Positions 4,620 through 42,239 of a stretch of DNA of 42,318 nucleotides are shown piece by piece; position 1 is the first letter of the stretch; the number at the start of each line of letters is the position of its first letter. Location: the NCBI RefSeq assembly GCF_001194135.2, contig NC_068983.1, positions 78,948,634 to 78,990,951 of the forward strand. The letters run 5' to 3'. The notes below the pieces were generated by a model that worked only from the letters and a program-made list of their open reading frames with translations, did not search any database and was not told where the DNA came from. Made by a program: the position numbers and the translations under genes. This DNA comes from Octopus bimaculoides (Eukaryota).

Positions 4620-4742
4620 TGACATTACCTGTACAGTTGCACCATGTGCCACATGCCAGATGACGAAATGATTGCAGAGCAACATGAAATGAAGTGCTTT
4701 GCTCAAAAACACAACATAATACCCGGTCTGGGAATCGAACAT
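4620..4742 (-). mobile_element. SINE 5' fragment (B-box head plus central domain)
   Basis: The reverse complement reads gttcgattcccagaccggg...gttgtgtttttgagcaaagcacttcatttcatgttgctc, homologous to the heads at 7154, 23902 and 42240. Confidence 0.6.
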
Positions 4743-7461: not shown

Positions 7462-8070
7462 ATGTATGAGAGTGTATAGGTGTGTGTCCTGGCATGGGTT
7501 GGTGAATTTGACTGGAACTGGCAAACCAGAAGACTGTGCCGAGCTCTAACTGCTTTCGTATGGTTTCTACAGGCAGATTGCCTTCATAACACATTTATGT
7601 ATGTACATGTACATGTGTATATAAGTGTATATAAGGTGCATAGTCTAGTGGTCAGGGTGTTGTATACATCATCACAGGATCATGGTTTTATTTCCTGGTT
7701 TGAGCAGTGTGTTGTTTTCTTGAGCAAAACACTTCAATTAATTCATTCAGCTTTAAATGAGTAACCCTGCCATGAACTAGTGTCTTCTGCAGGATCAGTT
7801 TTGTGCACTCAGTCATTTATATGCCATGGAAACCACACAACTGGCTCTACAAGTCCTAGGGCTCATAACAGCACAGCACTACACCACAATCTACCCTGCA
7901 TCCCACCATGATGTACCACACTCACACATACATTTCCCAGGAGACTTATTTACTATGTCTATAATATATGTGTATATGTGAATCAAGGGGTTATGCTTGT
8001 ATGTTTGACACAATAAGTTTATACGGGAGTGTGGATGTAGAGGATAAGTTTGGTGTTTCTGAAGTGCATG

Positions 8071-8190
8071 GTTTACAGCCATATCACACTGAATGCACCA
8101 GTTCTTGTCCGATATCTGAGGTTAATCAATATCGAGCTTAGTTAGTACTTAGATGAGTGACTGCTTGAGAAACCTAGGCGCAGCAAGCAT
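8071..8190 (+). pseudogene. 5S rRNA pseudogene (full length, CpG-decayed)
   Basis: GTTTACAGCCATATCACACTGAATGCACCAGTTCTTGTCCGATATCTGAGGTTAATCAATATCGAGCTTAGTTAGTACTTAGATGAGTGACTGCTTGAGAAACCTAGGCGCAGCAAGCAT aligns without indels to the metazoan 5S rRNA I recall (GTTCTCGTCCGATC..GAAGTTAAGCA..GGTTAGTACTTGGATGGGTGACCGCCTGGGAA). Many differences are CG>TG/CA. Confidence 0.9.
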
Positions 8191-9540: not shown

Positions 9541-11450
9541 GATGAAAATACAGTTCTTACTAATAAAAGTAATCTCATAGCACAGGAAAGGAGCAGTGGT
9601 AGTTTACTTGATGAGAGACATATAGATGATCTAAAAGAAGACAATAAAGCTAATGCCGACGTGACTGATAAACAAAAGGCAATCTACAACAGAATAAAGG
9701 CAAGACTACAGGAGAACGCTAGTGACATTATTTGCAACCTTAAAAAGGTTGACCAGTGGAAGCTGAACCAAGAAACAAAAAATGTGAATGATATTCTGAA
9801 ATACATCAGAACAAACAACATCACAGAAACAAATAACTCAATCAAGGCAGCAAGTATTGTTGTAGCAGAAAATGTGAGTGTTGATGTCAAGAAAAAGAAA
9901 GACAATGGGAGTGACAAAAGAAAAGACCCATGGTGGAAAAGAAGAATACAGGTAGGGTTAGATATACTCTCGGAGGAAATTTTTGTGCTAGACTGAAAAG
10001 AGAAAGGGGAGCTTAAAAGCGAACAAAAATACAGGGCATTGAAAAGGAAGCATAATATTAGAAGAAAGGGCTTGTAAGTGGTAATGGAGGAACTGAAGCA
10101 GTGCCTCATTGCAAAGAAAGCAATTTTGGTTGTATCTTACCACCAAAAGTGGTAAGATATACCAAAGGTGGTAAGATACAACCAAAGAATGAAAGGTTAC
10201 CACCAGAATAGGTTATTCAGAGTAGATCAGAAGAGATTCTATAAAGAAATAAATGGAGAGTGTACAGATGAAAAGTTGATACCAGATCACATTGAAAGTC
10301 AAAGGTTTTGGAGTGACATCTGGAGCAAAGACAAGGAACACAAGAAGGATACTGAATGGTTGCAAGAACTGAAACAAACAGCAGTCTGTCCAAAACAGGC
10401 AGAACTCGTCATTTGAGTTAGGGAAGTGAAGGAAATCAGCAAAAAGATGAGCAACTGGAGGTCCCCAGGGAGCAGATGGAGTTCAAGGCTACTGGATCAA
10501 AAGCTTTGGTGAATGTCATGCACGAATAGCTGCACAACTCAACACCTTGTTAAATGCTGACCAAGTAATACCAAAATGGTTGACATTAGGTAGGACAGTG
10601 CTGTGCTTGAAAAACATCGAAAAAAAGCAATACAGTAGACAATTACAGGCCAATATCCTATCTGCCACTAATGTGGAAATTATTGACTGGAATACTCACA
10701 GAGTCAATGTACGAACATCTGGAAAAAAATGGAGTCCTACCACATAAGCAGAAGGGTTGCAAGTGTAAGTGCAGAGGTACCAAGGATCAACTCTTGATAG
10801 ACAAAACTGTACTTAGAGACTGCAAGAGGAGGAAAAGTAACTTAGCTATGTCATGGATCGACTATCGTAAGGCATACAATATAATCCCACACTCTTGGAT
10901 AATGGAATGTATGAAGCTATTTGGCATTGCATCGAATGTTGAGTGACTGCTTGGAAAAAGTATGGTGAGTTGGAGGATAGACCTAACAGCATATGAAAGA
11001 AGCTTACAGACAAAAGAAATCAGGAGGAGCATCTTCCAAAAGGACTGCCTGTCCCCATTGATCTTTGTACTGTGCTTGGTACCACTAACACTGATACTGA
11101 GGAAAGCAAAAGCCGGGTATGTATTCAAAAGCCACCAACAAAAAGTCAACCATTTGTTATTCATGGATGATCTCAAACTTTATGGTAAAGATGAAGCCCA
11201 AGTCAGTTCCCTCGTTGATTCAGTGTATACTTTCAGTTCTGATATCAGAATGGAGTTAGGACTGAGAAAGTGTGGTGGTGTGTCAGTCTTGAAGAGAGGC
11301 AAAATCAAATGTATGGATGGGCTATCGATACCGTCGGGGGAGGTTATGAAGCAGATAGAAGAGATGGGCTATAAGAACTTGGGGATTTGAGAAATAGACA
11401 AATTGATGGAGAAAGAAATGATAGAAAAATTTAAGGTGGAGCACTTGCGA
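9532..11450 (+). mobile_element. R4/Dong-clade non-LTR retrotransposon, N-terminal and reverse transcriptase region (pseudogenised)
   Basis: Broken ORFs give [88 protein letters not shown] and NHLLFMDDLKLY (catalytic FMDD at 11160-11171). There are several stops and frameshifts. Confidence 0.92.
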
Positions 11451-12699
11451 ATACCTTAAAATTTCAAACAAATTTATTTTAGTATGGGGTAGGACCACCT
11501 TTGGCAGTAATTACAGCTTGAATTCTATGAGGTATGGACTCATACAAAGTTTAAATTGTTTCCAAAGAAATTTTTGTCCATTCTTCAGCTAAAACAATCC
11601 CCAGTTCTTGTAGTGATGATGGTGGAGAATATCGATTCCTTACTTGTTTTTCTAAAATGTACCATAAATGTTCAATAATATTGAGATCTGGGTACTGTGA
11701 TGGCCAGATAAGATGTTCAACTTCACTAGAACGTTCCTCATGCCATTCAGTAACAACTTTAGCTGTGTGTATTGGTGCATTATCATCTTGAAAGATTTCG
11801 TTTCCCTCTGGAAACAGTTCTGCAACCAAAGGATGAATTTGATCAGATAAAATGCTTAAATAGACTTGACTATTAATTCTACCATGAAGGGAAACCGTTG
11901 GGCCTGTGGATTTCCAAGATAAAGCCCCTACCAGATCATCACAGATCTTCCTCCATGTTTAACAGTTGGAAGAAGGCAGTCTGGGTCAAATACTTCTTTT
12001 GGCTGTCTCCACACGTATACTCAGCCGGTGGTTAGAAATAAGGTAAAGGATGACTCGTCCAAAAAAATACCATTCTTCCACTGCTCTAGAGACCAATTCC
12101 GTAGGTTTTTACTCCACTCTAAACGGTTTGCAACGTTTGTTTATGAAAGTAGTGGTTTTCTGATTGCAGCCCTACCATGAAATCTGGCTTTGTGCAGCTC
12201 CTTGTAAACAGTTTTTTCAGAAACTGGGTTCTCGAGGTGGTCATTAAGCTCTGCAGTAATTTTGGGAGCTGTACTTTTGTGATCCTTTCTAACAATTCGC
12301 ATAAGAGTCTGACAGTCCCTATCCGAAAGTTTTGATTTTCTTCCGGAATTTTGTTTCGACAAGGAGGCTTTTCCCTCTTTCTCAAAGGCTGTCATTACTT
12401 TCAAGACAGTATTTCTTGATACATCAAACATTTCAGCTATTTTCGTTATGCTAGCACCTACCATACAAGCATCAGCAATTTTCCCTCTTTGAAAGTTTGA
12501 TAGATCGGTCATTTTAATGAATTTTAATTACCTTTAACTGATGATATCTGAAAAGAAACAGCAATTTTAGCAAAACATATTAAGCAGGACTAATAATAAA
12601 TCAAAAAACAAAAATAAACCAGCTTTTGATGGTTTTATAGATATTTCAAAATTATGATGCTATGATGCTAGGTGTTTCCATAATTTTATCCAACCCCTG
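11451..12699 (-). mobile_element. Tc1 (DD34E) transposon remnant, left TIR truncated
   Basis: Minus ORFs read MTDLSNFQRGKIADAC...NSGRKSKLSDRD...GRAAIRKPLL, DESSFTL, TVKHGG, FQDDNAPIHT...PDLNIIEHLW and AKGGPTPY*. The right TIR is CAGGGGTTGGATAAAATTATGGAAACACCT (ends 12699). Only its inner end (atacct) survives at 11451. Confidence 0.93.
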
Positions 12700-13320
12700 A
12701 ATATAAATCTACACAAATACATATATCCATGCCCACTCATCCATGTATAGATCCAGAAGAAGAAGCTTCCATAAGATCACTTGACAATGAAGAATAGTAG
12801 CTAAATCTCTCCTATACTCTAAAATTGTTCACTTTTAGTAAAACAGTATTTTATTGACAAACTACAAAACGGCTTCCAGTAATTGTTTCTCTTCTTCAAA
12901 CTAGTAATTAGAATTCTGAATATTTTACAATCAGTGACCAAGTTTACTTCAGAAAAAGAAAGAAAATTCTTTTGAAACAGCAAGATAAATTATATTGAAT
13001 ATCATGTCTACTCTTTCAAAGATATCCATAAAAATTCAGGACTTCAGAATTACTTTCTACAATTTCCTGTTTCTGTAATAAAGCTTCTTGTGAAATTATC
13101 CAAAAGCAGTTCAAATATTTAATACATGTAACTGGATAAAATAAATTCTTATGACTATGTTTTTCTGATATTGTCATTAAGTTTACACAGTAGATGATAT
13201 ATTTTTGCTTCACAAAAACTTTTACAAATTCAATTTCTAAAATACATTCTGTTAGTTTGGAGTATCACTATTTCCATAAAATTCCTTTATTTAGATAGCC
13301 TGTGAGTTATGCTTCAGCAA

Positions 13321-13745: not shown

Positions 13746-13777
<32 letters not shown>

Positions 13778-14511
13778 GTATGGTGGTGGTCTACTCCTTA
13801 TGCAAAGTTTGACCAACTCCTGTACCTACACCTTAGAACCATCATGGCATCTCATGTGGTTTTTTAAACCAGACAATGTTTTCAAAAAGACACCCACATA
13901 CATTGCATATCCGATTTGGACCACCAACAGCTGCAGATAAGTTCTGATCTTTGTGGATCTAAAAATGTTTTTTGAAACCTCCATTAGATTTGCAAACCTT
14001 CTGGCATACATTGCATTCAAAGGTGTGCACAGACACATAGGCAGAATAATTGGTGGAGATTCATTTTCCATGGGTTCACAAATGAGATTTGAGCCCAGCA
14101 AAAGAAAGGCATAGTCTGTCATAAAGGATAAAATCATTCATGATTTAATCCGGTGGTCAGCACGAAAATAAAAAAACATTGCAAGTAAATTTTTCTAAAT
14201 ACTATATTGATAATTATATACATAATTATAACAAGGGATTGGAAACAAGACTATCCACATGCTGAAAATAGACACCAAATGACACTAAAAACCACCTTAA
14301 AAACTCCAAAAACACAGGTTGTGAATGGTAAAAGAAAAGTAATAAATCAAACTTTTAGTTAATTGTATATTAGAAATAATTTCAGGTTAAAACTAATAAA
14401 TACTTACTGTCATCATCAGCATAGATATTCCAGAGAATAAATGTACAAGTATCTACACATACTTATATGAGCAGCAACATCACACAGTAATATATATACA
14501 CACTTGCAAAA
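13778..14511 (-). mobile_element. ~730-bp dispersed repeat with an RTE-like 3' end carrying two disrupted C2H2 zinc fingers (copy 1)
   Basis: The minus strand reads FECNVCQKVCKSNGGFKKHF*IH and ICNVCGCLF/KTLSGLKNHMRCH. It ends GGAGTAGACCACCACCATAC + microsatellite and is collinear over its whole length with 36385-37116. Confidence 0.7.
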
Positions 14512-23901: not shown

Positions 23902-24218
23902 GGTTGCATGGCTTAGTGGTTGTGGGTGTTCGGCTCATGCTGGTAAGGTTGTGAGTTCGATTTTCAGCAGCACATTGTTTCCATGAGCAAGACACATTAT
24001 TTCACATCTCACAGTTCATTCAGCTGGCAAAAATGAGTAGTAACTGTATTTCAAAGCCTTGTCACATTCTGTGTTACACTGAATCTCCCTGAGAAACATG
24101 TGAAGGGTATGTGTGTCTGTGGAGTGCTTAGCCACTTGCACATTAATCTCACAAGCAGCCTGTTCCGTTGATCAGAGCAACTGGAACCCTCATCGTCATA
24201 AGTGATGGAGTACCAGTT
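23902..24218 (+). mobile_element. tRNA-derived SINE, second family
   Basis: gcatggcttagtggtt...gtgagttcgatt...cagttcattcagctggcaaaaatgagtag...ctggaaccctcatcgtcataagtgatggagtaccag. Collinear with 7154-7461. Confidence 0.75.
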
Positions 24219-29869: not shown

Positions 29870-30114
29870 CATAAATAATATATAATTATATGCATATATC
29901 CATACATATATGTACATACGTACATCTATATGTATACATACATACATATATGGGTACAGGATATCACAAAAAACGTTAAACACAATGAGAAACGAAAACA
30001 TAAAGACGAAGACAGAAAACGAAGTTTTTTTCGAACAACGAAAAAAAAAACAAACAGAGAAATGAGACATGTAACATAAAGAATATTTCCCTTCTTCACT
30101 CCATAATTGCCCAT

Positions 30115-30345
30115 GGGCATATGGCGTAGTGGTTAAGAGCATGGGCTACTAACCCTAAGATTCCGAGTTTGATTCCAGGCAGTGACCTGAATAATAACAA
30201 CAACAACAAAAAGTACCTTAGGAATGAGAACCCAGGTTCGAAATTTCCCCAAGACACCTGATGTAGGGTGGAGGGTATATCAGCCAAAACATTGTGTTAA
30301 CAACAAACAAGATGAGAACAAATATCCGTCAAATATAAATAATGT
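30115..30345 (+). mobile_element. tRNA-headed SINE with an (AAT/AAC)n linker and a decayed hammerhead-like motif in its tail
   Basis: A 73-nt tRNA-like head (30115-30187: tggcgtagtggttaagagc...ctactaa...gagtttgattcc) is followed by ACAC-CTGATGT-A-GGGTG-gagggtatat-CAGCC-AAAA-CA-TT-GTGT at 30254-30297. Confidence 0.65.
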
Positions 30346-30539
30346 AAAATAAGGTTTCTTTCAGTTTCCATCTACGAAATCCACTCACAAGGCTTTGATT
30401 GGCCCAAGGTTACACACGGTGGGACTGAACCTGAAAGCATATGGTTGGGAAGCAAACTTCTTATCATATAGCCATGCCTGCACATATTTTACAAATTTTT
30501 GTGCAATGCTTCCAATTGATGCCAATATTTCTCTGCATT

Positions 30540-31050
30540 AAGTGTTTCACTTTGGCTAAATACTTCATGATTGACAATGCCTTTCATATCACACAAAACA
30601 CAAAGCACAAACTTTTTAGCTGTAGTCCTGGTTTGGGGATGGACTCTCCTTTTTCAGTGGAAGCTAACCATTGCCATTTGTGTTGATTTTGATTATAGAG
30701 AACCCACTTTCATTACTTGTGATGATTCTACCAAGAAAAGGATATGGTATCAAGTCTATTCTTCTATGAAGAGCAGAGGGCAACATTTTGATTAAGCTGA
30801 GAAGCAGTCAGATGATGAGAAACCCACTGAATAAGTTTAGATGCTTTTCCTAGTTTGTGAAAATGTTTTATGGTTGAAGTGTGACTTGAATTGTACTATT
30901 TTGCTTATTCACATGCAGCTTGCATTGGTTTTCCACGACTACAGTTTTCAAAACCAAAAATTCCTAGCCTTGGGTCTGCCTACCTCTAGGAGAGTCTCCA
31001 ATGATGGCACAGGGTGGGAAAATTTGTCAATTATGTTCAAAAATTTAAAG
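30540..31050 (-). mobile_element. Second, more decayed mariner transposase remnant
   Basis: Minus frames give LGKASKLIQWVSHHL (WVPHEL motif), LGRIITSNE/KWVLYNQ and KWQWLASTEKGESIPKPGLQ. Confidence 0.8.
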
Positions 31051-31523
31051 GTGAGTACAGTCATCACATCATTATCATCATTGTCATCATTGTCATCATT
31101 ATCATCATCATCATCATCATCATCATTGTTTCAACATCCATTTTCCATGTTCACATGGGTCCAATGAAATTTGTAGAAGCAAATTTCCTACAGCCAGATG
31201 TGCTTTGTGTTGCCAACCTACAGTAAAATAATATTTCCCCATGACCAGACATGTTTTTACAGAAGATTGGAGATGATGGACATTGGATGCATGATGTTTA
31301 CTACTGTCACAGTAAGTCGGGGCATAGAAACAGTAATACACACACACACACATTTCATTGTTCATCTTTATTTGTTTCAGTCATTTAGCTGCGGCCATGC
31401 TGGGGCAATGCTGCGAAATGTTTTTTAGTCAAACAAATTGACCCCACACCTTTTTTTTTTCTTTTTAAGCCTGGTACTTATTCTATCAGTCGCTATTGCC
31501 AAACCACTCAGTTTTATACATAC

Positions 31524-31592
<69 letters not shown>

Positions 31593-34182
31593 ATGGGCTT
31601 CTCAGTTTCCACCATCAACCAAATTCACTCATAAAGGTTTGGTCAGACCAAGGATTATAGTAGAAGATACTTGCCCAGGGTACAATCAAGTGGAGCTGAA
31701 CCTGAAACTGTGTGGTTAGAAAGCAAACTTTCTATCGCACAGCTATGTCTGCACTTGTATATAATTAGTTACATGCATCTTGCAACTGGGAGATGAGTAT
31801 GGGAAGACAAATGTGTTGTTAGTTATTAAAACCAGCTTACTGAGTAAACAGACTTTTTCAAAAGCCAGGCGTATGTGTGAAAATTTATTTAAATAAATGG
31901 GGCTTTTGGTTGTGAAGTGGATGGGAACCAACGATATTGGAATTCTATCATTAGCATGGTCAATCCTGATGTGATTCCATATGCTTTCTTCTGTACAGTA
32001 CTGATTGTCTCATTATTTTTACTAATAATACACAGTCATATGCCAATAATATTACACTGTAATCCTCCTTAACCTTCTGCACACAGACATAATTCACAGT
32101 AACCTTGAACCCTCATGACAAACAGCACTGAATCCATGAACAGAGATGTTGAAGACAGTTGTCAATGAGAACATGACAAACTAGTCTTTCTGCAAAGGGA
32201 AAATGGCATAATTGCTACTCAAATCAAGGAAACAATCTTGCTACATCCTTCCTGCATATAAATAACATTCATAATTAAATCCTGCAAAAGTCACTACAAG
32301 ACTCACAATTTTTATCTCACAAATATAACATAACAAAAACAGTATTTCTAAGACTAAGTTTCTTTTCTTTCTTCAGTACCAGAAAATGCATCTGAAGGAA
32401 GTGAATTGGCAGAGTTGTTAGAATAGCAGATAGAATGCCTTGTCATATATCTTCTGGCTCTTTCTATTTTGAGTTCAAATCCTTCTAAGGTCAACTTTGG
32501 CTTTCCCTCTTTTTGGGGTTGATGGAAAGGTACCAATCAAACATAGTGCATTCACAGAATGGAAAAAATTTTGGAGCAGATGCTTTGCAGGATCTGTCCT
32601 GATTTTTAACATTCTGAGTTAAATCTTGTTATGGTTTACTTGGGATGTAGACTTAGTTCATCACACCATTACCTGGCACCTTGAGTGGATGCCATTAGTG
32701 GACTCCACAATGCTGTAAGCATTTGTGACAAGTCTCCACTCTGAGGATACTTCCCTCCCAGCAATCTCGGAGCCCTGTAAAAGGTCAATGATGCAGCCCT
32801 TCCACCTGTTTAAAAGATGAAAAAATAAATTACTACACTACTCACAAATCTGTAATGATTCTATTGCTATTACACACTCAAATACCTCTGATTGCATCTA
32901 AATATAAGTCATCTGAGTGGCCAACAGTCAAAAATTTGCACCCTCCACCCTGTCAATCAGATGTGCCACTTTCGTCTGTATTTTTTCTATGACTACTTCT
33001 TTGGTCTCTGCTCCTCTCAATTAGCAAGTTGCACATATTTTCATCCAAGCATCCCTGATAGACTTGTCTCTGTCCTTGTCATTCTAGCTGTATCTCAGCT
33101 ACTAGATTCTCTACAAAATTCATTGCTCGATTCTTCTTAGCTGCCCACATTTTTTACCTCCCACTTCTACTTTTTCTTGTAAACATCAATATACAGAAGT
33201 TCAAAATGAACATTAGTCTCAATGATGAGAAATTCTACAAAGGTAATAGACAGAGGGCAGTTTGTTCAATCAACTCATTTCTAATCTCTCAACACTTCTA
33301 TGTAACTTCCATTGGTGAAAACATAAACAAATCTGTGAAATATTCTATATCAAACCTCAGAAAACTTTTATTTCTTTCAGTAATTCTATATCACTCAAGA
33401 ATTTATTATCAACTGAGTTTATTATAGGACTTGGTTAGAAGCAAAGGAAGCATGATAAAATATGGCAATGTAATATGGTTAATTAAACAAAATGACATAT
33501 GTTTAGATACCGGTACACTATATTTATAAATAATGAAAAATGTCAAACATTTAGAAATAATGCATAAGTGTATGATTATACATAAATAGAACCTCCTATT
33601 GAGAGGTACTTAGAAGCTAGATACAGTAAATAATTTTTTTTTTTTTGCACTTATGACTTAAGATGTTTTTCTGCATCTTTGATTAAACCAAAGACTTAGA
33701 TGATAAAATGACACAGGCACAGCTACTACATGGATAAAAATTTAGCTTCACAACCACATGGTTTTAGGTTCAATTCTATTGCATGGCACTTTGGGAAAGC
33801 TTTTTTTTACAAAAGCTTTAGATTGATTAGTATCTTGTGAATTGAATTTGGCTGATAGAAATTGTGTGAAGAATCCATCATCTGTCTCTGTGTGTGTGTG
33901 TGTGTGTGGTTAATAAGTTCACATTTCAACCATTTGGCTTCAGTTCAGTTTTTCCATGTGGAGCCTTGAGCAAGTGTCTTTTAATATAGGCTCTTGTTGA
34001 CCAATCTGATATTTATGGAACTTGCTAAAGAAAGCAAGGATTTTAACATCCATTTCTCCATGCTTATTTGGGATCAGACAGAATTCACTGAGGCAGATTT
34101 TTCTATTACTAGAAGCCCTTCCTATCACCAATTCTCACCTGTCTCCAAGCAAGGTAATATTTCCTCAAGGCCAAACCAGCAA

Positions 34183-34395
34183 GAATAGTAGAATTATTAG
34201 CACACCAAGCAAAATGCTTAACTGCATTTCATCCATTTTTACATTCTGAGTTAAAATACCATGAAGGTTGACTTTGCCTTTTGCCTTTCATCTTTTAAAG
34301 GTCAATAAAATAAGTACCAGTTGCGTGCTGGGGTCATGTAATCAACTTGCCCCTTCCCCCAAAATTGCTGGCCTTGTGCCAAAATTTGAAACCAA
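34183..34395 (+). mobile_element. tRNA-derived SINE, third family
   Basis: caaaatgcttaactgcatttc...gaggttgactttgcc...tttcatctttt..ggtcaataaaataagtaccagttg...ccccaaaattgctggccttgtgccaaaatttgaaacca. Confidence 0.7.
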
Positions 34396-35881
34396 ATATT
34401 TCCTCAAGGTTGAACATCTTTTCATGGAAACAAATTATGCTACTCATATGATGGTGATGCTCATTTACAAGTGTCACATGTCAAAACACGGAGACATAGA
34501 CACATGCACACACAGACATGCACACACACACACACACATAATAGGCTTCTTTCAGTTTTTATCTATTAAAATCTACTCACAGGGCTTTTGTCAGCTCAGG
34601 GTGATAGTAGTAGAAGACACTTGCCCAACTTCTAGGTGCAATCCCATGGTCATTTGTGACTGAAGGGGGTCTTCACCCTTACCAATAATGCATGTATAAT
34701 ACAAAAACATGATTCAGACTGTGATAATCAATAAAATAGAAATAGAATTTTAAAAGTTATTCTTCCTGTACAGTCTGGTATCAAACTGATCTATCGTCTG
34801 GTGGTGATCAACAGTCCAGTGATTGATGACTCCTGCACTTGATAATAAACAAAAAGTTACCATTAAATAGGATCTGGTATGATCACAGCTGAAATATCTT
34901 TAATTCCAGGTTCGTTTGATCAAGTTCAGACTGGGACTCTAACCACAAGAATAAAGATTAATGGAAAGTATGTGTGGACTGAAAATGACAACCACCATCA
35001 TCAGAATTATTTTAATGTCCACTTTTCTATGCTTGCATGGGTCAGATGGAATTGTTGAGATAGATTTTCTTGGACTGAATACTCCTCCTGTCCCCAACCT
35101 TCATCTGTTTCCAAGCAAAATAATATTTCTCTATGTCTGAATATTGCTTGTACATCAATGATGTTAGTGATGTTTGTTTATAAATATCACATGATGTCAA
35201 AACAAGGAAACACAAACATACATATACACACACTTGCTTATGTACACACACACACATATACATTTGTATATCTATATACACACATATATAACAAGTTTTG
35301 TTCAGTTCCTGTATACCAAATCCACAACTATAGCCTTAAGCATTGGTTAACTTCAGGCTATCATAGAAGGCACATGACTAAGGTGCCATGCTGTGAGACT
35401 GACCTCAAAAGATGGGAAGAAATTTCTTAACCACACAGCAATGTTTGTTCCTACTTCATAACCACACAGACTTTGAAAGACATTTACATCTCTAGCAATT
35501 TGAGAAAGATTAAAAAAGGTCACACATCACTGTAGGTTAATGAAATACCTAAGAAATGTAGGAGAGACTATTTATGTGAAACATAAACCAACTAATCTAC
35601 AGTTTTATTTTTCTAGAGAGACATAAAGAGAGAAAGCAGAAGAGTGATATAGTCATACATCAACAGTTGCATTACCACATTACTAAATATATATCAAAGT
35701 CAGTTTTGCTAATATCAAAATGAATCACTCATATATTTACACATAGTATATCATTATCATTAATGCAATCATTATAAAACTGTCAAATTTAAGTATGCTT
35801 AAGGCAATTTGTACCAAAGTATTAGTATCTGACAACTCAATAAAACCCTTGAGTATATCCAGTATACTACATACACACCTA

Positions 35882-36098
35882 CAAGGGGATGATGAAAAGT
35901 TCCTGGCTTTGGGTAAAAGAAAACACAGGAGGAACAGTTAATCATGATTTTATTCAACATATACCCCTGTCAGGTTTGCACACTTATTGCAGCAGTCCTT
36001 CAGTTTTTCTAAGCCCTGTAAAAGAACTTGGAAGGTTGGACCTTCAACCAAGCCATTCGTGATACCCTTAAAGCCTGGAACTTTTCAGCACACCCTCA
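35882..36098 (-). mobile_element. Mariner-type MITE, copy 2
   Basis: TA|CAAGGGGATGATGAAAAGTTCCTGGCTTT ... AAAGCCTGGAACTTTTCAGCACACCCTCA|TA. Confidence 0.85.
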
Positions 36099-36258
36099 TA
36101 TGTGCGTGCATGCACACACACGTATATATGTACACAGTGTGGACCAATATATACATTATATACACACACACACATATATAATATATATATACATATAAAT
36201 ATATATATATATATATATACATACATATATATATATATATACATACATATATATATAT

Positions 36259-36304
<46 letters not shown>

Positions 36305-36384
36305 TTGGTTGAGTCAGTCTTTTGTTACTCTGAGTTTCACCTTTGGGTGCACAGTCAATACTAAATGTATGTATGTGTATATGC

Positions 36385-37116
36385 ATGGTGGTTATCTACT
36401 CCTTATACAGAATTTGACCACCTCCTGTACATACACCTTAGAACCATCATGGCATCTGATGTGGCTTTTTAAACTAGACAATGTTTTCAAAAAGACACCC
36501 ACATACATTGCATATCCGATTTGGACCACCAACAACTGCAGATAAGCTCTGATCTTTGTGGATCTAAAAATCTCTTTTGAGGCCTCCGTTAGATTTGAAA
36601 ACCTTCTGGCATATATTGTATTCAAAGGTGTGCACAGACACATAGGCAGAATAGTTGATGGAGGTTCGTTTTCCATGGGTTCACAAATGAGATTTGAGCG
36701 TAGCAAAAGAAAGGCATGGTCTGTCATAAAGGATAAAATCATTCATGATTTTATCAGGTGGTCAGCACGAAAATAAAAAACCTTGCAAGTAATTTTTTCT
36801 AAATACTATATTAATAATTATATACATAATTATAACAAGGGATCAGAAACAAGACTCTCCATATGCTGAAAATAGACGCCAAATGATGCTAAAAACCACC
36901 TTAAAAACTCCAAAAACACAGGTTGTGGATGGGTAAAGGAAAAATAATAAATCAAACTTTTAGTTAATTGTTTATTAGAAATAATTTTAGGCTAAAACTT
37001 ATAAATACTTACTGTCATCATCAGCATAGATATTCCAGAGAATAAATGTACAAGTATCTACACATACCTATACGAGCAGCAACATCACACAGTAATATAT
37101 CTACACACTTGCAAAA
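36385..37116 (-). mobile_element. ~730-bp dispersed repeat with disrupted C2H2 zinc fingers (copy 2)
   Basis: Same boundaries and same disabling stop and frameshift as 13778-14511. Confidence 0.7.
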
Positions 37117-37369
37117 TAAAACTTGCCACTGGTACAGGAGCCAATCAGATGGACCTGGCATCAGCCATGTTCAGATGGTGCTTTTTATGTGCCACCAACA
37201 CAGGAACCAGTCAAGGGGCACTGGCCACAGCTACGATTTTGGCTTTATTTGACTCAACAGGTCTTCTCAAGCATATCATATCACCTGATGCATATATATA
37301 TATATGCTGTGGAGTATTCCGACGGTTTGAAATTTATTGAGTGAATATGAACACTGACCTTTGAAATTT

Positions 37370-37763
37370 GTTATACATCATTAGATGTATACCTGACTTT
37401 CCTATATAAAATTAAAGAATATAACGGAACGCTGAACTCCGGACTATCAACTTAAACAACATTTATTCAGGTGGTAAATATATACATCTTTAGCTCTTGT
37501 TGTTACAGCTTCTATGTGTGTGAGCATAGTTGTTGGGACGTTGTTATGTAGATGTGAGCGAGCTGTCGAGTGTAAGTCCGAAAGATGGAGAGTGACAGCT
37601 ATACACGTAAAGAGACTGTCTCTAGGTTGGAATGTCAGAGACACTGCTTGACACGTCCACGCTCTATTGCTGGCCAGCAAGAAAGAGATAGAATTAAGCG
37701 GGAAAGCTTGCTTGTTTAATTCCACGCATGCGTGAGACTACGCATGCGCACGGCGTTGCTACA
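37370..37763 (-). repeat. 3' LTR (~400 bp; the last ~13 bp appear lost)
   Basis: On the minus strand it starts TGTAGCAAC right after CTGGCAAGGGAACCC and contains AATAAA (37462-37467). Its terminal part matches the right-hand copy. Confidence 0.65.
37724..37750. promoter_or_regulatory. Two NRF1-like GCGCATGCGC-type palindromes in the LTR U3 region
   Basis: ACGCATGCGT (37724-37733) and ACGCATGCGCA (37740-37750) in a CpG-rich segment. Confidence 0.45.
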
Positions 37764-37778
37764 GGGTTCCCTTGCCAG
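37764..37778 (-). other. Polypurine-tract-like motif
   Basis: Minus strand CTGGCAAGGGAACCC directly before TGTAG. I recall this spaced PPT layout from CsRn1/Boudicca-type Gypsy elements. Confidence 0.5.
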
Positions 37779-39233
37779 TGCGAGAAACGCACGATAATAT
37801 TAAATCTGTTAGAACACCTGAGGCAGGATGGCCACTGAAAACCACCCACAAGAATGTAGCACAAAACACACACAAAGAAAAATTAAAGAAATGAAATGTA
37901 CACTCGTGTGATACATGCATGCAATGTACAAATGAAATGACAATGACAACTGTCCAGGAAACTGGAATCACGCGATGTAAAAGTCTGATTGTTTGTTTTC
38001 CCTGAAAGGAAAGGAAATATATGAGTGCACAAGTGTGTGTGTGAGTGAAAACACAGAACAAGTGAAAGTGTCTGTATAGAAAAAATCCAGTTCGTACAAG
38101 AGTTACACAAGTTGATTTTGAATGTCCGTACTCAGGAAGTTGTGGTCAAGGAGCAGAGCTATAGTTGAGCGTCGGAATGCTAGTTGTGACTGGTTACCCG
38201 ATACGGAATATTCAATTCGGCTAGCTCTTACTGTTGTGCGCGAGTGGAAACATCCACTCTAACAGAGTCGATACAACCGAGTGTGTTGATCTGGTGTGTC
38301 CCTGGTGGTGGGGTTGTTGGCGCACGACATTGTGGTAGACAGTACATTGATGGTGAAGACGTCGGCGCAGGAACTGTAATATAGCTGTGTTCTGTTTGTG
38401 TGGTGGTAATGATCTGTTGAAACTTGGCGACGTCGGGGGGAATGCTTGTAGTTGGTAGTAGTAATTGTTGTCGTCACGGTGGTAATCTTGGTTGAACGAA
38501 GCTGGTGGCGAAAAAGCTGTTTGGTGATGAGTGTTTGAAGAGGTGCGCTTATTACAGACGATCGACAGACAAATCTCTGTACGGCCATTAGCGAAAACCT
38601 CGAAGAAAATTTTCTTAACCCAAGATGAAAAAAACGACCGTGCGAACTCAAAAAGGAGAAATGGTGACGAATGGAAAAACAGAGGACTCCTTTTATTTAA
38701 ACGTGTCACACGGTCGAACACCAAAATATATATCAAAGATGATATACAAGTAATTATGTTATACTACGGTAACATAGATTTCGTAAATACCAGTAATGAG
38801 ACGATATAAACAACCATATGAAATGAATAACAAGAGTTATTGTGTGGCATAAAAGATGTATGTGTATGTGAGAGTGTGAATGCGACATATAAGAACATAA
38901 TAAAAGACAGGCCGTCTATATGTATGTGAAATATCACAGCAGAAAGAAAGTCAGTACACGAGAGTTTTATACCAAGTTTTTTGAGTACACAATAGGAAAT
39001 ATCACAGGCTGTAATTCTTGTCTGTTTATCGTGAGTGGAAACAGCCACTCTAACAGAGGCGAGATAAAAAAAAACGCGCTTGTTGGTGTTGGTAATATGT
39101 AGTTCAGTCTCCATGGCCGTATTTGTTCTTTAGTCGGGTTCACCAGTTATAAGTTGGTAGTCCAGAGTCCATGCTGCGTTTTTTCTTCGTCGAATCACCA
39201 CTTTATAAGAAAGTGGGTTATTGCAGCTCAGTG

Positions 39234-39266
39234 GGCTGCGTGTTCGAATCACGTCGGGGGTCACCA
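39234..39266 (-). other. Primer-binding site complementary to the 3' end of tRNA-Trp (extended to 33 nt)
   Basis: The plus strand GGCTGCGTGTTCGAATCACGTCGGGGGTCACCA matches the 3' portion of eukaryotic tRNA-Trp including the non-templated CCA (one extra G). Confidence 0.85.
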
Positions 39267-39267
39267 G

Positions 39268-39438
39268 TATAGGAAAGTTGGTTATACATCATTAGATGTA
39301 TACCTTACTTTCCTATATAAAATTAATGAATATAACGGAACGCTGAACTCCGGACTATCAACTTAAACAACATTTATTCAGGTGGTAAATATATACATCT
39401 TTAGCTCTTGTTGTTACAGCTTCTATGTGTGTGAGCAT
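39268..39438 (-). repeat. 5' LTR, partial (truncated by the assembly gap)
   Basis: The minus end ...CCTATA-C-TGG is one substitution from CTACA, the inverted repeat of the LTR start TGTAG. The sequence matches 37370-37527. Confidence 0.7.
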
Positions 39439-40228
39439 NNNNNNNNNNNNNNNNNNNNNNNNNNNNNNNNNNNNNNNNNNNNNNNNNNNNNNNNNNNNNN
39501 NNNNNNNNNNNNNNNNNNNNNNNNNNNNNNNNNNNNNNNNNNNNNNNNNNNNNNNNNNNNNNNNNNNNNNNNNNNNNNNNNNNNNNNNNNNNNNNNNNNN
39601 NNNNNNNNNNNNNNNNNNNNNNNNNNNNNNNNNNNNNNNNNNNNNNNNNNNNNNNNNNNNNNNNNNNNNNNNNNNNNNNNNNNNNNNNNNNNNNNNNNNN
39701 NNNNNNNNNNNNNNNNNNNNNNNNNNNNNNNNNNNNNNNNNNNNNNNNNNNNNNNNNNNNNNNNNNNNNNNNNNNNNNNNNNNNNNNNNNNNNNNNNNNN
39801 NNNNNNNNNNNNNNNNNNNNNNNNNNNNNNNNNNNNNNNNNNNNNNNNNNNNNNNNNNNNNNNNNNNNNNNNNNNNNNNNNNNNNNNNNNNNNNNNNNNN
39901 NNNNNNNNNNNNNNNNNNNNNNNNNNNNNNNNNNNNNNNNNNNNNNNNNNNNNNNNNNNNNNNNNNNNNNNNNNNNNNNNNNNNNNNNNNNNNNNNNNNN
40001 NNNNNNNNNNNNNNNNNNNNNNNNNNNNNNNNNNNNNNNNNNNNNNNNNNNNNNNNNNNNNNNNNNNNNNNNNNNNNNNNNNNNNNNNNNNNNNNNNNNN
40101 NNNNNNNNNNNNNNNNNNNNNNNNNNNNNNNNNNNNNNNNNNNNNNNNNNNNNNNNNNNNNNNNNNNNNNNNNNNNNNNNNNNNNNNNNNNNNNNNNNNN
40201 NNNNNNNNNNNNNNNNNNNNNNNNNNNN

Positions 40229-40840
40229 TGTCTTTGAGCTTTTAAAGTTCAATGGTAATCCATGTAGATAATAGTTGGAAAAATAAGGATGCATGAAAAT
40301 TGAGAGTTGTGTTAGTTTAAAAAAGGAGCTAAAAGTTTATGTGTTAAGCAGGAAGTGTGGTGTCAAAACAGGAAGTGTGTGAAAGGGGAGACAAATCTCT
40401 TTAGTTGGAATTATGAACTCTTTGTCAATAGGAAGTTTATGTCTGTTCCTAGAGAAATAAGGTCACTGAGGGGTTTGTGTATTAAGAAATGATTGGAATT
40501 TCTCTATGAAAATATTCTCCTTGTTGATTCTTTCTTGTGTGGAGATTCTGTCTTTACATTGATAGAAAGGGAATATAAGGAATTTAGGGTTTTTGCTTCT
40601 GGAGCAAGAGTCTATGTGGCCACTGAGTGGAACTTGGCAGTGTTAGTGATGTAATCATAACTCCAACTAAAGAGATTTGTCTTCCCTTACACACTTTCTG
40701 TTTTAACACCACACTTCCTGCTTAACACATAAACCTTTAGCTCCTTTTTTAAACTAACACAACTCTCAATTTTCATGCATCCTTATTTTTCCAACCATTA
40801 TCTACATGGATTACCATTGAACTTTAAAAGCTCAAAGACA
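40229..40840 (-). mobile_element. Penelope-like element fragment: GIY-YIG endonuclease C-terminus between ~187-bp inverted repeats
   Basis: Minus 40463-40642 reads HCQVPLSGHIDSCSRSKNPKFLIFPFYQCKDRISTQERINKENIFIEKFQSFLN..*, resembling PLE endonuclease ends (IFPFY..KE..FI....LN). 40229-40416 is an inverted copy of 40655-40840. Confidence 0.7.
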
Positions 40841-40990
40841 ATATAATGTATTGGTATATTTATTTTTTTATATATTATTTTTTTTATATATTATTTTTTT
40901 ATATATTATTTTTTTCATTTTTTACTTTATTGTAAAACACATTTTCATTCTCCCACTTCTTAAAAATTTGCCATGCAATGAAAACCTTGA

Positions 40991-41255
40991 CAACATAATG
41001 TGGAAATCCTGGTTAGGACAATTGTTACTGTTATTTAGCTTCAGGAAACATCGTTTCCAGCTGGCTATATGATGCACTATCTGCATCCTTATATTTTCAA
41101 ACAAGATATTGCTTTGAGCTGAGTGAGGATGCTAAACTCTCTTGCTCAAAGATATAAGGTCACAGATAGTGTCTCGTATAGCCAGCTGGAGACAATGTTT
41201 CCCAGGGCTAAATAACAGTAACAATCGTCCTAACGAGGACTGCCACATTATGTTG
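40991..41255. mobile_element. Foldback/MITE-like element with ~115-bp inverted arms and a 35-bp spacer
   Basis: 40991-41105 pairs with 41141-41255 (caacataatgtgg...gttaggac.attgttactgttatttagc...ccagctggctata...cactatctg...ccttatat). No clear TSD. Confidence 0.75.
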
Positions 41256-41327
41256 GCAAATAATCTTTACTCTAAAGTACTGTTACTGAATGTCTCCTGT
41301 TCAGAGATTTAGAAATAATAATTTTTG

Positions 41328-41375
<48 letters not shown>

Positions 41376-41904
41376 CATGATGGACTCTCCTGTTGAAAAA
41401 ATCATGTAAGTGTTCAGTTTTTGCTGAACAACCTGCACAAATGATTTGTTTACAATGATTAAATGTATGTGCTGTACTCTATTTTTTACGCTTGCATATA
41501 TATGTATATATTCCTTCTCTCTATGAAATCGACATAGCCCGATAAGGTGCACAGGTATATCATGCATCAGGTGTTGAAGTGATCACAGAGCAATCTGAGA
41601 TTATTTGTTTTGCTCAAGAATACAATGCACCACTTGTTCTAGGAATTGAAACCATGATCTTGCGATCATGAGTACATCACCCTAACCACAGGGCTATGCA
41701 TCCTTACATATGTACGTATATATACATATTGCTGATATTATGATAATTTTATAAACTTTTGAGAGATGAAATAATTATTTTTTGGAATATCTCAAGGCAT
41801 ATACATAAAGCAATAAATAATGGCATGTAAATATTGAGTTTAAATACACTTTTAGATATATGTATTATGTATGTATATATGTATAGGTGTGTGTATATAT
41901 ATAT

Positions 41905-42239
41905 GAGACACCCTTTGGTCATGACTGACCATGGGATTGCACCTAGAAAGTTACCTGCCCAGGCACAAGTCCAGGCAAGGTTGTTTTATGGAAGACCAGC
42001 AGTCGCCCATGCATACCGGCCTCCCCTCTCCACACCACCAATGTCATCCAAGGATGAAGCAAAGGCCGATACAGCTTGGCACCTGTGATGTTGCAACTCA
42101 TTTCTACAGCTGAATGAACTGGGGCAACGTGAAATGAAGTGTCTTGCTCAAGAACACAACACGCAGCCCAGTCCAGGATTCAAACTCACAACCTCACGAT
42201 CGTAAGCTCGACGCTCTAATCACTGAGCCATGCGGCTTC

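What the first reader, a model, noticed from the sequence alone, without database searches (positions are those of the whole stretch)
37370..39438. Young non-autonomous tRNA-Trp-primed LTR retroelement with no recognisable gag/pol
Seen: two LTR copies 1911 bp apart with 2/158 mismatches, a PBS, a PPT-like tract, an AATAAA and a CpG-rich interior, unlike the CpG-depleted surroundings. The ~1.5-kb interior has only short unrecognised ORFs: minus 116 aa starting gccATGG at 39114, minus 171, 130 and 100 aa, and plus 92 aa. Known: tRNA-Trp priming is used by CsRn1/Boudicca-type Gypsy elements, and TRIM/LARD-type parasites exist. Inference: this is a recently active parasite of an autonomous Gypsy family whose interior is not a simple gag-pol deletion and may act as structured RNA or encode small proteins.
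Basis: partly seen in the sequence, partly recalled or inferred. Interest (0 to 1): 0.7.

Follow-up and report, generated by a model that had tools for sequence, protein, structure and literature searches.

The report
Non-coding tRNA-Trp-primed LTR retroelement copy
This is most likely one young copy of a short, protein-less LTR retrotransposon in an octopus-type genome that borrows the enzymes of a tRNA-Trp-primed Gypsy element; it is an ordinary kind of genomic parasite with an unusually long, triplicated primer-binding region.

Summary
Two 164-nt direct repeats lie 1911 bp apart (2/158 mismatches in the core), and the second is cut by a 790-N assembly gap. CpG o/e is about 0.6-1.2 inside against 0.17-0.31 outside. 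The listed ORFs exist.

The element reads on the minus strand. The window's only tRNA-Trp 3'-end match (with CCA) lies 14 nt inside the right-hand repeat, in primer-binding orientation. A 50-nt hairpin (z about -6 to -7) pairs the LTR end with the spacer before this site.

The antisense tRNA-Trp match runs 43 nt, not 18. The LTR-end/PBS module recurs twice more in decayed form. Metagenome contigs carrying CsRn1-clade Gypsy elements (CHCC gag) show the same extended and multiplied tRNA-Trp sites.

The interior shows no coding signal: no codon periodicity, no Pfam hit in six frames, and no homolog in 5.8 or 1.84 billion proteins. Apart from the PBS hairpin it has no unusual RNA structure.

Verdict: probable non-autonomous LTR retroelement, a new member of a known kind. 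The "structured RNA or small proteins" idea is not supported.

The parts
39275..39438 (-). Visible 3' part (U5 side) of the 5' LTR, minus orientation. The rest lies in the assembly gap.
   Evidence: Direct repeat with 37364-37527. Contains minus-strand AATAAA at 39373-39378 and the TATA-like TATATATTT at 39387-39395.
39439..40228 (.). 790-N assembly gap hiding the remainder of the 5' LTR, the element's end and one TSD copy.
   Evidence: N run.
39267..39317 (-). About 50-nt hairpin pairing the LTR end (TATAGGAAAGT, 39307-39317) with the 12-nt spacer before the PBS (39268-39278). Resembles a U5-leader stem.
   Evidence: strand folding: -24.4 kcal/mol, z=-5.8 (minus); -26.4, z=-7.2 (plus); 0/200 shuffles fold as well. 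It is the only outlier in the sliding scan.
39248..39266 (-). Primer-binding site complementary to the 3' end of tRNA-Trp including CCA. One extra C relative to the 18-mer TGGTGACCCCGACGTGAT.
   Evidence: It is the only such match in 42 kb on either strand (score 52; next best 22).
39224..39266 (-). Extended antisense tRNA-Trp stretch of 43 nt, reaching the anticodon loop. 36/42 identical to human tRNA-Trp plus a 1-nt insertion.
   Evidence: Local alignment, using the tRNA-Trp sequence quoted in PMC6379413.
39098..39222 (-). Two further, decayed copies of the module [LTR-end-like + spacer + PBS + T-arm complement]: unit 2 about 39150-39222, unit 3 about 39098-39160.
   Evidence: MAFFT alignment of the three units with the tRNA-Trp 3' part.
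37777..39097 (-). Non-coding interior: CpG-rich, with the minus strand G-poor.
   Evidence: CpG o/e. No Pfam hit, no Rfam hit, no protein homologs, no codon periodicity. RNA z-scores average about -0.9.
38231..38271 (.). Copy 1 of a 41-nt internal repeat containing the stem-loop GAGTGGA-AACA-TCCACTC.
   Evidence: D15; 85%, E 2.8e-7; z -1.1 to -1.6, not significant on its own.
39022..39062 (.). Copy 2 of the 41-nt internal repeat and stem-loop.
   Evidence: plus-strand z -3.45, minus-strand z -1.45.
37764..37776 (-). Weak polypurine-like tract (GGCAAGGGAACCC on the minus strand), directly upstream of the putative LTR start TGTAGC.
   Evidence: Read from the sequence. The layout (purine run, 3 nt, TGT) matches the PPT layout in CsRn1-clade loci L003 and L019. 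Inferred, not shown.
37364..37763 (-). 3' LTR. 37364-37527 is shown by the repeat. 37528-37763 is inferred from TGT...ACA ends and the PPT-like tract. The left boundary is ambiguous within 37360-37370.
   Evidence: Contains AATAAA at 37462-37467, TATATATTT at 37476-37484, and two CGCATGCG motifs at 37725-37732 and 37741-37748.

Best explanation
This is one copy of a short LTR retrotransposon without protein-coding capacity, about 2.3 kb long if the LTR is about 0.4 kb. It sits on the minus strand of an octopod genome.

Layout in minus orientation:
- 5' LTR, mostly hidden in the gap.
- A 12-nt spacer that base-pairs with the LTR end to form a 50-nt stem.
- A primer-binding site for tRNA-Trp that continues as antisense tRNA-Trp for 43 nt.
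- Two decayed duplicates of this LTR-end/PBS module.
- About 1.3 kb of non-coding sequence.
- A weak polypurine tract.
- The 3' LTR.

Inferred mechanism: the LTR drives a Pol II transcript. That RNA is packaged and reverse-transcribed in trans by Gag, RT and integrase of an autonomous tRNA-Trp-primed Ty3/Gypsy element, most plausibly of the CsRn1 clade. The DNA copy is then integrated.

Inferred origin of the long antisense-tRNA tail and the repeated modules: scars of plus-strand strong-stop DNA that read past position 58 of the primer tRNA in earlier replication cycles.

Shown: the repeats, the PBS, the hairpin, the missing coding signal and the youth of the copy.
Inferred: full LTR extent, transcription, trans-mobilisation, and the partner.
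For: - Direct repeats with a sharp outer boundary.
- The only tRNA-Trp 3'-end match with CCA in the window lies 14 nt from the inner repeat boundary, in the orientation a PBS needs.
- A hairpin joins the LTR end and the pre-PBS spacer, z -5.8 to -7.2.
- AATAAA and a TATA-like box lie in the same (minus) orientation inside the repeat.
- TGT...ACA ends and a purine run sit 3 nt before TGT, as in CsRn1-clade loci.
- CpG o/e is near 1 inside against 0.17-0.31 outside, and LTR divergence is 1.3%.
- The contig breaks inside the repeat, as expected if the remaining LTR parts are near-identical (inference).
- No gag or pol: Pfam in six frames, 5.8-billion and 1.84-billion protein searches, tblastn with CsRn1-clade gag/pol pieces, and no CHCC motif.
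- Eighteen of 20 metagenome loci are not whole tRNA genes and carry an antisense tRNA-Trp run of 28-50 nt, most of them a few nt after a CA-ending sequence.
- Four of these loci (L003, L015, L017, L019) have the CHCC gag signature; L019's copy carries an in-frame stop within the motif, and L003 and L015 are one element on two contigs. Sampled gag, RT and integrase pieces from L003, L013, L017 and L019 hit Pfam DUF7041, RVT_1, Integrase_H2C2 and rve.
- L003/L015 and L013/L016 also have multiplied PBS modules.
- The literature defines the CsRn1 clade by a tRNA-Trp PBS, CHCC gag and a 4-bp TSD (PMC3630058, PMC2582038).
Against: - Only one copy is seen. No other copy or fragment was found in the window, in 20.8 kb of Octopus sinensis, or in metagenome or viral collections.
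- The right end, the full 5' LTR and the TSD lie in the gap.
- The PBS has a 1-nt insertion, giving 10+8 nt of pairing.
- The 12-nt LTR-PBS spacer is longer than the 1-6 nt seen in the CsRn1-clade loci.
- The LTR termini differ between the two copies (AACCA against AACA), and the boundary is ambiguous over about 7 nt.
- The PPT is weak.
- One minus frame has only 6 stops in 493 codons (0/1000 shuffles). This is unexplained and could be a trace of old coding sequence.
Confidence: 0.7

Rival explanations
1. A one-off dead derivative: a single internally rearranged or deleted copy of an autonomous tRNA-Trp-primed Gypsy element. It keeps the LTRs and leader, but its interior is scrambled or captured sequence, and it never propagated as a non-autonomous family.
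For: Only one copy is seen. The stop-poor minus frame could be a remnant of coding sequence. The PBS is imperfect.
Against: The LTRs are only 1.3% diverged and CpG is undecayed. A recently deleted gag or pol should therefore still be recognisable, yet nothing matches. There is no codon periodicity.
Confidence: 0.13
2. A tandem array or local duplication with a 1911-bp period. This could be either LTR-internal-LTR-internal arrays made by unequal recombination or a large-unit satellite, with further units hidden in the gap.
For: The second repeat runs into a gap, so only 'unit + start of next unit' is visible. TRIM-type elements in bivalves also occur as tandem repeats (PMC6934838).
Against: A pure satellite would not explain a tRNA-Trp complement with CCA and a U5-leader-type stem placed exactly at the unit junction. 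An LTR-int-LTR-int array would still be an LTR element.
Confidence: 0.1
3. Assembly artefact: the contig end at 39275-39438 was wrongly extended or scaffolded into a copy of a repeat from elsewhere, so the two repeats are not really 1.9 kb apart.
For: The window comes from a gap-rich short-read scaffold with 8 N runs, and the repeat abuts a gap.
Against: Sequence is contiguous from 37364 to 39438 with no N. The PBS and hairpin span the junction between the interior and the right repeat, which is the biologically expected junction. The copies differ at 4 positions, so this is not a duplicated read pile.
Confidence: 0.04
4. A plus-strand tRNA-derived element: a SINE-like or Helenus-type TRIM with a tRNA-like Pol III promoter, or LINE-made 'tailless' retrocopies of tRNA-Trp 3' fragments that happen to lie next to a repeat.
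For: The tRNA-like stretch is in sense on the plus strand, ends in CCA and occurs three times. Helenus TRIMs with tRNA-like LTR parts exist in molluscs (PMC10886601).
Against: There is no 5' half of a tRNA: no acceptor 5' strand and no D-arm. ARAGORN and Rfam find nothing. CCA is not gene-encoded in eukaryotes, so the stretch is copied from a mature tRNA. It lies outside the direct repeat, whereas the Helenus tRNA part lies inside the LTR. The same antisense arrangement sits at the PBS of gag-pol-bearing Gypsy loci.
Confidence: 0.03

Closest known systems
Non-autonomous LTR retrotransposons (TRIM / LARD series; e.g. biv-TRIM of bivalves, PMC6934838)
   Same: Terminal direct repeats, PBS, putative PPT, no gag or pol, and presumed mobilisation in trans by an autonomous LTR element.
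   Different: At about 2.3 kb it is larger than TRIMs (usually under 1 kb, with a short internal domain) and smaller than LARDs (several kb). No family or copy number is shown. The PBS region is extended and triplicated.
CsRn1 clade of Ty3/Gypsy (CsRn1, PwRn1, AgCR, CsRn1_Cv1; PMC2582038, PMC3630058)
   Same: PBS complementary to tRNA-Trp and TGT...ACA-type LTR ends. CsRn1-clade loci fetched here also show antisense tRNA-Trp extending beyond 18 nt and tandem PBS-like modules.
   Different: No Gag with CX2HX9CX3C, and no PR, RT, RH or IN. There is no sequence similarity to those proteins. The LTR-PBS spacer is 12 nt rather than 1-6 nt. The TSD is unknown.
Helenus / Ajax / Cassandra (TRIMp3: TRIMs with small-RNA-derived LTR parts; PMC10886601)
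   Same: A small non-autonomous LTR element containing tRNA-related sequence. Described in molluscs (bivalves) and dependent on Gypsy elements in animals.
   Different: In Helenus the tRNA-like part is a gene- or SINE-derived Pol III promoter inside the LTR. Here it is the 3' part of mature tRNA-Trp with CCA, lies outside the LTR, and is antisense to the element, so it is PBS-derived.
Retroviral PBS-region structures and extended primer complementarity (U5-leader stems; lentiviral complementarity up to tRNA position 55, PMC8599865)
   Same: A stem joins U5 with the sequence next to the PBS. Genome-tRNA complementarity continues past the 18-nt PBS, which lets read-through strong-stop DNA still transfer.
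   Different: The complementarity here is much longer (43 nt, into the anticodon loop), imperfect, and repeated three times. There is no functional evidence.

Membership tests
LTR retrotransposon (structural definition) | Two long terminal direct repeats in the same orientation | tested here: met
   164 nt, 97.6% identical, 1911 bp apart. The full length is hidden by the gap.
LTR retrotransposon (structural definition) | PBS complementary to a tRNA 3' end just inside the 5' LTR | tested here: met
   tRNA-Trp complement at 39248-39266, 12-14 nt from the LTR edge, with one extra C.
LTR retrotransposon (structural definition) | Polypurine tract just upstream of the 3' LTR | tested here: inconclusive
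   Only AAGGGAA, 3 nt before a putative TGT start. The LTR start itself is inferred.
LTR retrotransposon (structural definition) | TG...CA termini and target-site duplication | not testable with these tools
   One end and one flank lie in the 790-N gap. The visible end reads ...AACA / ...AACCA.
Non-autonomous LTR element (TRIM/LARD type) | No gag or pol coding capacity | tested here: met
Non-autonomous LTR element (TRIM/LARD type) | Multiple dispersed copies with TSDs, i.e. evidence of mobilisation | not testable with these tools
   No DNA search of the host genome was available. No copy was found in the window, in L021 or in the collections.
TRIM (strict) | Miniature size: total under about 1 kb with a short internal domain | tested here: not met
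   The interior is at least about 1.5 kb and the unit spacing is 1911 bp.
CsRn1 clade (Ty3/Gypsy) | PBS for tRNA-Trp | tested here: met
   Clade definition in PMC3630058 and PMC2582038.
CsRn1 clade (Ty3/Gypsy) | Gag with the CHCC signature CX2HX9CX3C | tested here: not met
   The motif is absent from all six frames. No DUF7041 or any gag hit.
CsRn1 clade (Ty3/Gypsy) | Pol with PR-RT-RH-IN and a GPY/F integrase motif | tested here: not met
   No RVT, rve or protease hit. tblastn with clade proteins gave only noise.
CsRn1 clade (Ty3/Gypsy) | 4-bp TSD | not testable with these tools
   The right end is in the gap.
Helenus (TRIMp3) | tRNA-like sequence with A and B boxes inside the LTR | tested here: not met
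   The tRNA-like stretch lies outside the repeat, lacks the 5' half and carries CCA.

The most novel reading that the evidence does not exclude
The 43-nt antisense tRNA-Trp tail and the triplicated LTR-end/PBS module may not be decay. They may reflect a lineage-wide property of tRNA-Trp-primed (CsRn1-type) retroelements and their parasites. In this reading, plus-strand strong-stop synthesis regularly reads past m1A58 of tRNA-Trp. The copied tRNA sequence is then fixed in the genome. The resulting long complementarity, and perhaps the spare PBS modules, keep strand transfer working with under-modified primers.

If so, the end points and mismatches of these tails would be fossil records of tRNA modification sites. 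Examples are the mismatch at the complement of position 37 in L004, and runs that stop just before position 26 in L002 and L004.
Probability: 0.25. Interest if true: 0.5.

Novelty: new member of a known kind. Interest (0 to 1): 0.3.

Why it matters
If confirmed as a family, this would be a cephalopod example of a mid-sized non-autonomous LTR retrotransposon tied to the CsRn1 Gypsy clade. It would be useful for repeat annotation of octopus genomes and as a young insertion marker.

The more general point is the PBS region. Extended antisense tRNA-Trp and multiplied PBS modules appear both here and in autonomous CsRn1-clade elements from unrelated hosts. This offers a natural data set on read-through of the primer tRNA during reverse transcription.

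Tried and rejected
The gap could not be closed, and depth and copy number could not be measured.
- Exact-match scans of an LTR 22-mer in metagenome and viral collections: 0 hits.
- Exact-protein look-ups of element ORFs and neighbouring ORFs: nothing on record.
- Protein homology: 14 stop-to-stop ORFs concatenated, searched against 5.8 billion proteins, gave 0 hits. ORF1+X+ORF2 (297 aa), searched against 1.84 billion representatives, gave 0 hits.
- Pfam on the ORFs and on all six full frames gave only sub-threshold noise; the best was Herpes_PAP at 17.8 bits against a cut-off of 25.
- Rfam at gathering and at E<=10 gave nothing meaningful in 37000-39438. ARAGORN found no tRNA.
- Coding test: one minus frame is stop-poor, but there is no codon-position bias (p=0.62), and three frames are open at once over 38262-38473. 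I rejected coding; the stop depletion remains unexplained.
- Structured-RNA test: sliding 120-nt z-scores average -0.8 to -1.0 inside against -0.2 to -0.6 outside. I rejected this apart from the PBS hairpin. The first attempt timed out.
- NUMT, foreign DNA, or an rDNA or snRNA unit as the source of the CpG-rich interior: rejected, because there is no protein or RNA family match.
- Empty-site reconstruction from paralogous flanks: the 753-nt repeat 36366-37116 ends 250 nt before the element, so it does not help.
- m1G37 as the stop that defines the tail: not supported. The ends of the tails in 18 loci scatter between 28 and 50 nt.
- The fetched Gypsy loci were handled only as pieces, and my oriented working copies were deleted.
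Full report
**Observation**

The window is a gap-rich scaffold with 8 N runs. A 164-nt direct repeat, 37364-37527 and 39275-39438, is 97.6% identical with 1911-bp spacing (E 9e-77). Its mismatches lie at 37366, 37369, 37395 and 37416. This gives Jukes-Cantor K=0.0128 with a 95% CI for p of 0.15-4.5%, or roughly 0.6-6 My for rates between 1e-8 and 1e-9 per site per year.

The right copy ends at a 790-N gap, 39439-40228. Sequence left of copy 1 is unrelated to sequence left of copy 2 (score 14 against a shuffle mean of 15.7), so the repeat has a sharp outer edge somewhere within 37360-37370. No other copy or fragment exists in the window.

CpG o/e is 0.62-1.23 in the element, against 0.17 in 30000-37363 and 0.31 downstream.

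**Orientation and retroelement anatomy**

On the plus strand, 39224-39266 reads CAGCTCAGTGGGCTGCGTGTTCGAATCACGTCGGGGGTCACCA. Aligned to human tRNA-Trp (sequence quoted in PMC6379413), this covers the tRNA from the anticodon loop through the CCA end. Identity is 36/42, with one extra G. It is the only such match in the 42-kb window on either strand (score 52; next best 22).

Read on the minus strand, this stretch is a primer-binding site, TGGTGACCCCCGACGTGAT at 39266->39248. It lies 12-14 nt inside the right-hand repeat. The element is therefore on the minus strand, and the gap-side repeat is its 5' LTR.

The 12-nt spacer (ACTTTCCTATAC) is complementary to TATAGGAAAGT inside the LTR. Together with an inner palindrome this gives a hairpin of about 50 nt, 39267-39317. 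Its energy is -24.4 kcal/mol with z=-5.8 on the minus strand and z=-7.2 on the plus strand, and 0 of 200 shuffles fold as well. A stem joining U5 to the sequence next to the PBS is a familiar retroviral feature (established knowledge), and it explains the unusually long spacer.

In the same orientation the repeat carries AATAAA (39373-39378 and 37462-37467) preceded by TATATATTT.

If the LTR begins at TGTAGC (37763 downward), it is about 394-400 nt long with TGT...ACA ends. It would be preceded by GGCAAGGGAACCC, which is a weak polypurine tract. The contig break inside the repeat fits it, because near-identical LTR remainders would collapse in a short-read assembly (inference).

**The PBS region is longer and more complex than a standard PBS**

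The antisense tRNA-Trp match runs 43 nt rather than 18.

The module [last LTR bases + spacer + PBS + T-arm complement] occurs three times in tandem: 39213-39290, about 39150-39222 and about 39098-39160. The two inner copies are decayed.

To see whether this is peculiar, I scanned metagenome contigs for TGGTGACCCC(N)GACGTGATTYGAACACGC. This returned 20 loci. Three are whole tRNA genes or tRNA-like sequences: L011, and L009/L014, which are bacterial-type.

The other loci carry an antisense tRNA-Trp run of 28-50 nt, in most cases 1-8 nt after a CA-ending sequence. Several are followed by retroelement genes:
- a DUF7041-type gag in L017, L019 and L013, and RVT_1 with Integrase_H2C2 and rve in L003, on the pieces sampled;
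- in L003/L015, L017 and L019, the CsRn1-clade Gag signature CX2HX9CX3C, 800-1050 nt after the PBS (L019's copy has an in-frame stop, and L003 and L015 are one element on two contigs; signature defined in PMC2582038).

L003/L015 have three to four PBS-like modules in tandem after the LTR. L013 and L016 have duplicated T-arm complements.

Extended and multiplied tRNA-Trp PBS regions are therefore a recurrent trait of autonomous CsRn1-clade Gypsy elements. This strengthens the link between the octopus element and that clade.

The T-loop difference from human tRNA-Trp (G at position 57) is also present in several of these loci, so it is probably an isodecoder difference rather than decay.

A plausible origin is read-through of the primer tRNA past m1A58 during plus-strand strong-stop synthesis. 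PMC8599865 describes both the block at m1A58 and conserved lentiviral complementarity up to position 55 as a second safety stop. This origin is inferred, not shown.

**Interior**

No gag or pol is recognisable:
- Pfam on 10 of the ORFs and on all six complete frames gives only sub-threshold noise.
- Fourteen stop-to-stop ORFs found nothing among 5.8 billion proteins.
- ORF1+X+ORF2 (297 aa) found nothing among 1.84 billion representatives.
- tblastn with the CsRn1-clade gag and pol pieces gives only chance hits.
- No CHCC motif is present.

One minus frame has only 6 stops in 493 codons, which 0 of 1000 dinucleotide shuffles reach. However, several things argue against coding:
- That frame stays open through the PBS and the LTR.
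- It shows no codon-position composition bias: chi-square p=0.62 overall and 0.69 for the 180-codon stretch.
- All three minus frames are open at once over 38262-38473.
- The minus strand has only 16% G.

I read the long ORFs as compositional and leave the stop depletion unexplained.

RNA folding z-scores in 120-nt windows average -0.8 to -1.0 inside against -0.2 to -0.6 outside. The only outlier is the PBS hairpin window.

A 41-nt repeat with a small stem-loop occurs at 38231-38271 and 39022-39062. Its role is unknown.

Rfam and ARAGORN find nothing in the element.

**Host**

A random 20.8-kb piece of the Octopus sinensis genome (L021, GCA_006345805.1) shares 23 repeat matches with the window at 70-90% identity. 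These include an 86% match over 1278 nt to the Tc1-like remnant. None falls in 37364-39438. The window therefore comes from an octopod.

**What could not be done**

No tool here searches a eukaryotic host genome by DNA. Exact scans of metagenome and viral collections with an LTR 22-mer gave 0 hits, and exact-protein look-ups gave nothing. Copy number, TSD, the LTR remainder and the autonomous partner therefore remain open.

**Verdict**

The anatomy fits a young, non-autonomous, tRNA-Trp-primed LTR retroelement on the minus strand (confidence about 0.7). The rivals are:
- a one-off dead derivative (0.13);
- a tandem array (0.10);
- an assembly artefact (0.04);
- a plus-strand tRNA-derived element (0.03).

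It fails the coding-based criteria of the CsRn1 clade and the size criterion of strict TRIMs. It is best filed as a mid-sized non-autonomous LTR element that probably depends on a CsRn1-type Gypsy.

The kind of element is known. The modestly interesting part is the extended, multiplied PBS module shared with autonomous CsRn1-clade elements.

Noticed in passing
window 8071-8189 (+): Full-length 5S rRNA match (63.6 bits, gathering score 38) with many CpG-type decays. It is followed by a non-5S tail and a (TG)n run, so it is likely a 5S pseudogene or a 5S-derived SINE rather than a working gene.
   Followed up: partly
window 36366-37116 and 13760-14511: 753-nt repeat at 92.4% identity. It ends 250 nt before the element, so it gives no empty-site information.
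   Followed up: partly
window 40229-40840 and 40987-41259: Two foldback or MITE-like structures. The first has arms of 152-188 nt at 96-97% complementarity, with its left arm abutting the gap. The second has 120-nt arms at 83%.
   Followed up: no
window 11455-12708 (-) and 9661-11390 (+): A Tc1-like transposase remnant, 86% identical at nucleotide level to a copy on Octopus sinensis chromosome CM016861.1, and fragments of a LINE reverse transcriptase.
   Followed up: partly
window 41900-42235: tRNA-derived SINE-like repeat. It has related copies at 23906-24044, 7613-7739 and 4679-4716. It resembles the octopus SINEs of Ohshima and Okada 1994, judged from memory only.
   Followed up: no
window 37764-39244, minus strand: One reading frame has 6 stops in 493 codons, which 0 of 1000 dinucleotide shuffles reach. 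It shows no codon-position bias and no homolog. This is unexplained.
   Followed up: yes
window 37725-37732 and 37741-37748: Two CGCATGCG palindromes (NRF1/ewg-like core, judged from memory) in the CpG-rich far end of the putative LTR. They could be promoter or enhancer elements.
   Followed up: no
L002 and L004 (metagenome loci), PBS region: The antisense tRNA-Trp runs 49-50 nt, ending just before the complement of position 26. L004's only mismatch is at the complement of position 37. Both are sites of reverse-transcriptase-blocking modifications in eukaryotic tRNAs (m2,2G26 and m1G37; own knowledge). These may be modification scars, but the sample is tiny.
   Followed up: partly
L003/L015, L013/L016/L008 (metagenome loci): Autonomous or gag-bearing Gypsy elements with several PBS-like or T-arm-complement modules in tandem next to the main tRNA-Trp PBS. 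L003/L015 carry the CHCC Gag signature.
   Followed up: partly
L002 878-2590: Downstream of an extended tRNA-Trp PBS lies an ORF with a NADAR domain (E 5.8e-20) instead of a recognisable gag. This may be a captured gene or an unrelated neighbour.
   Followed up: no
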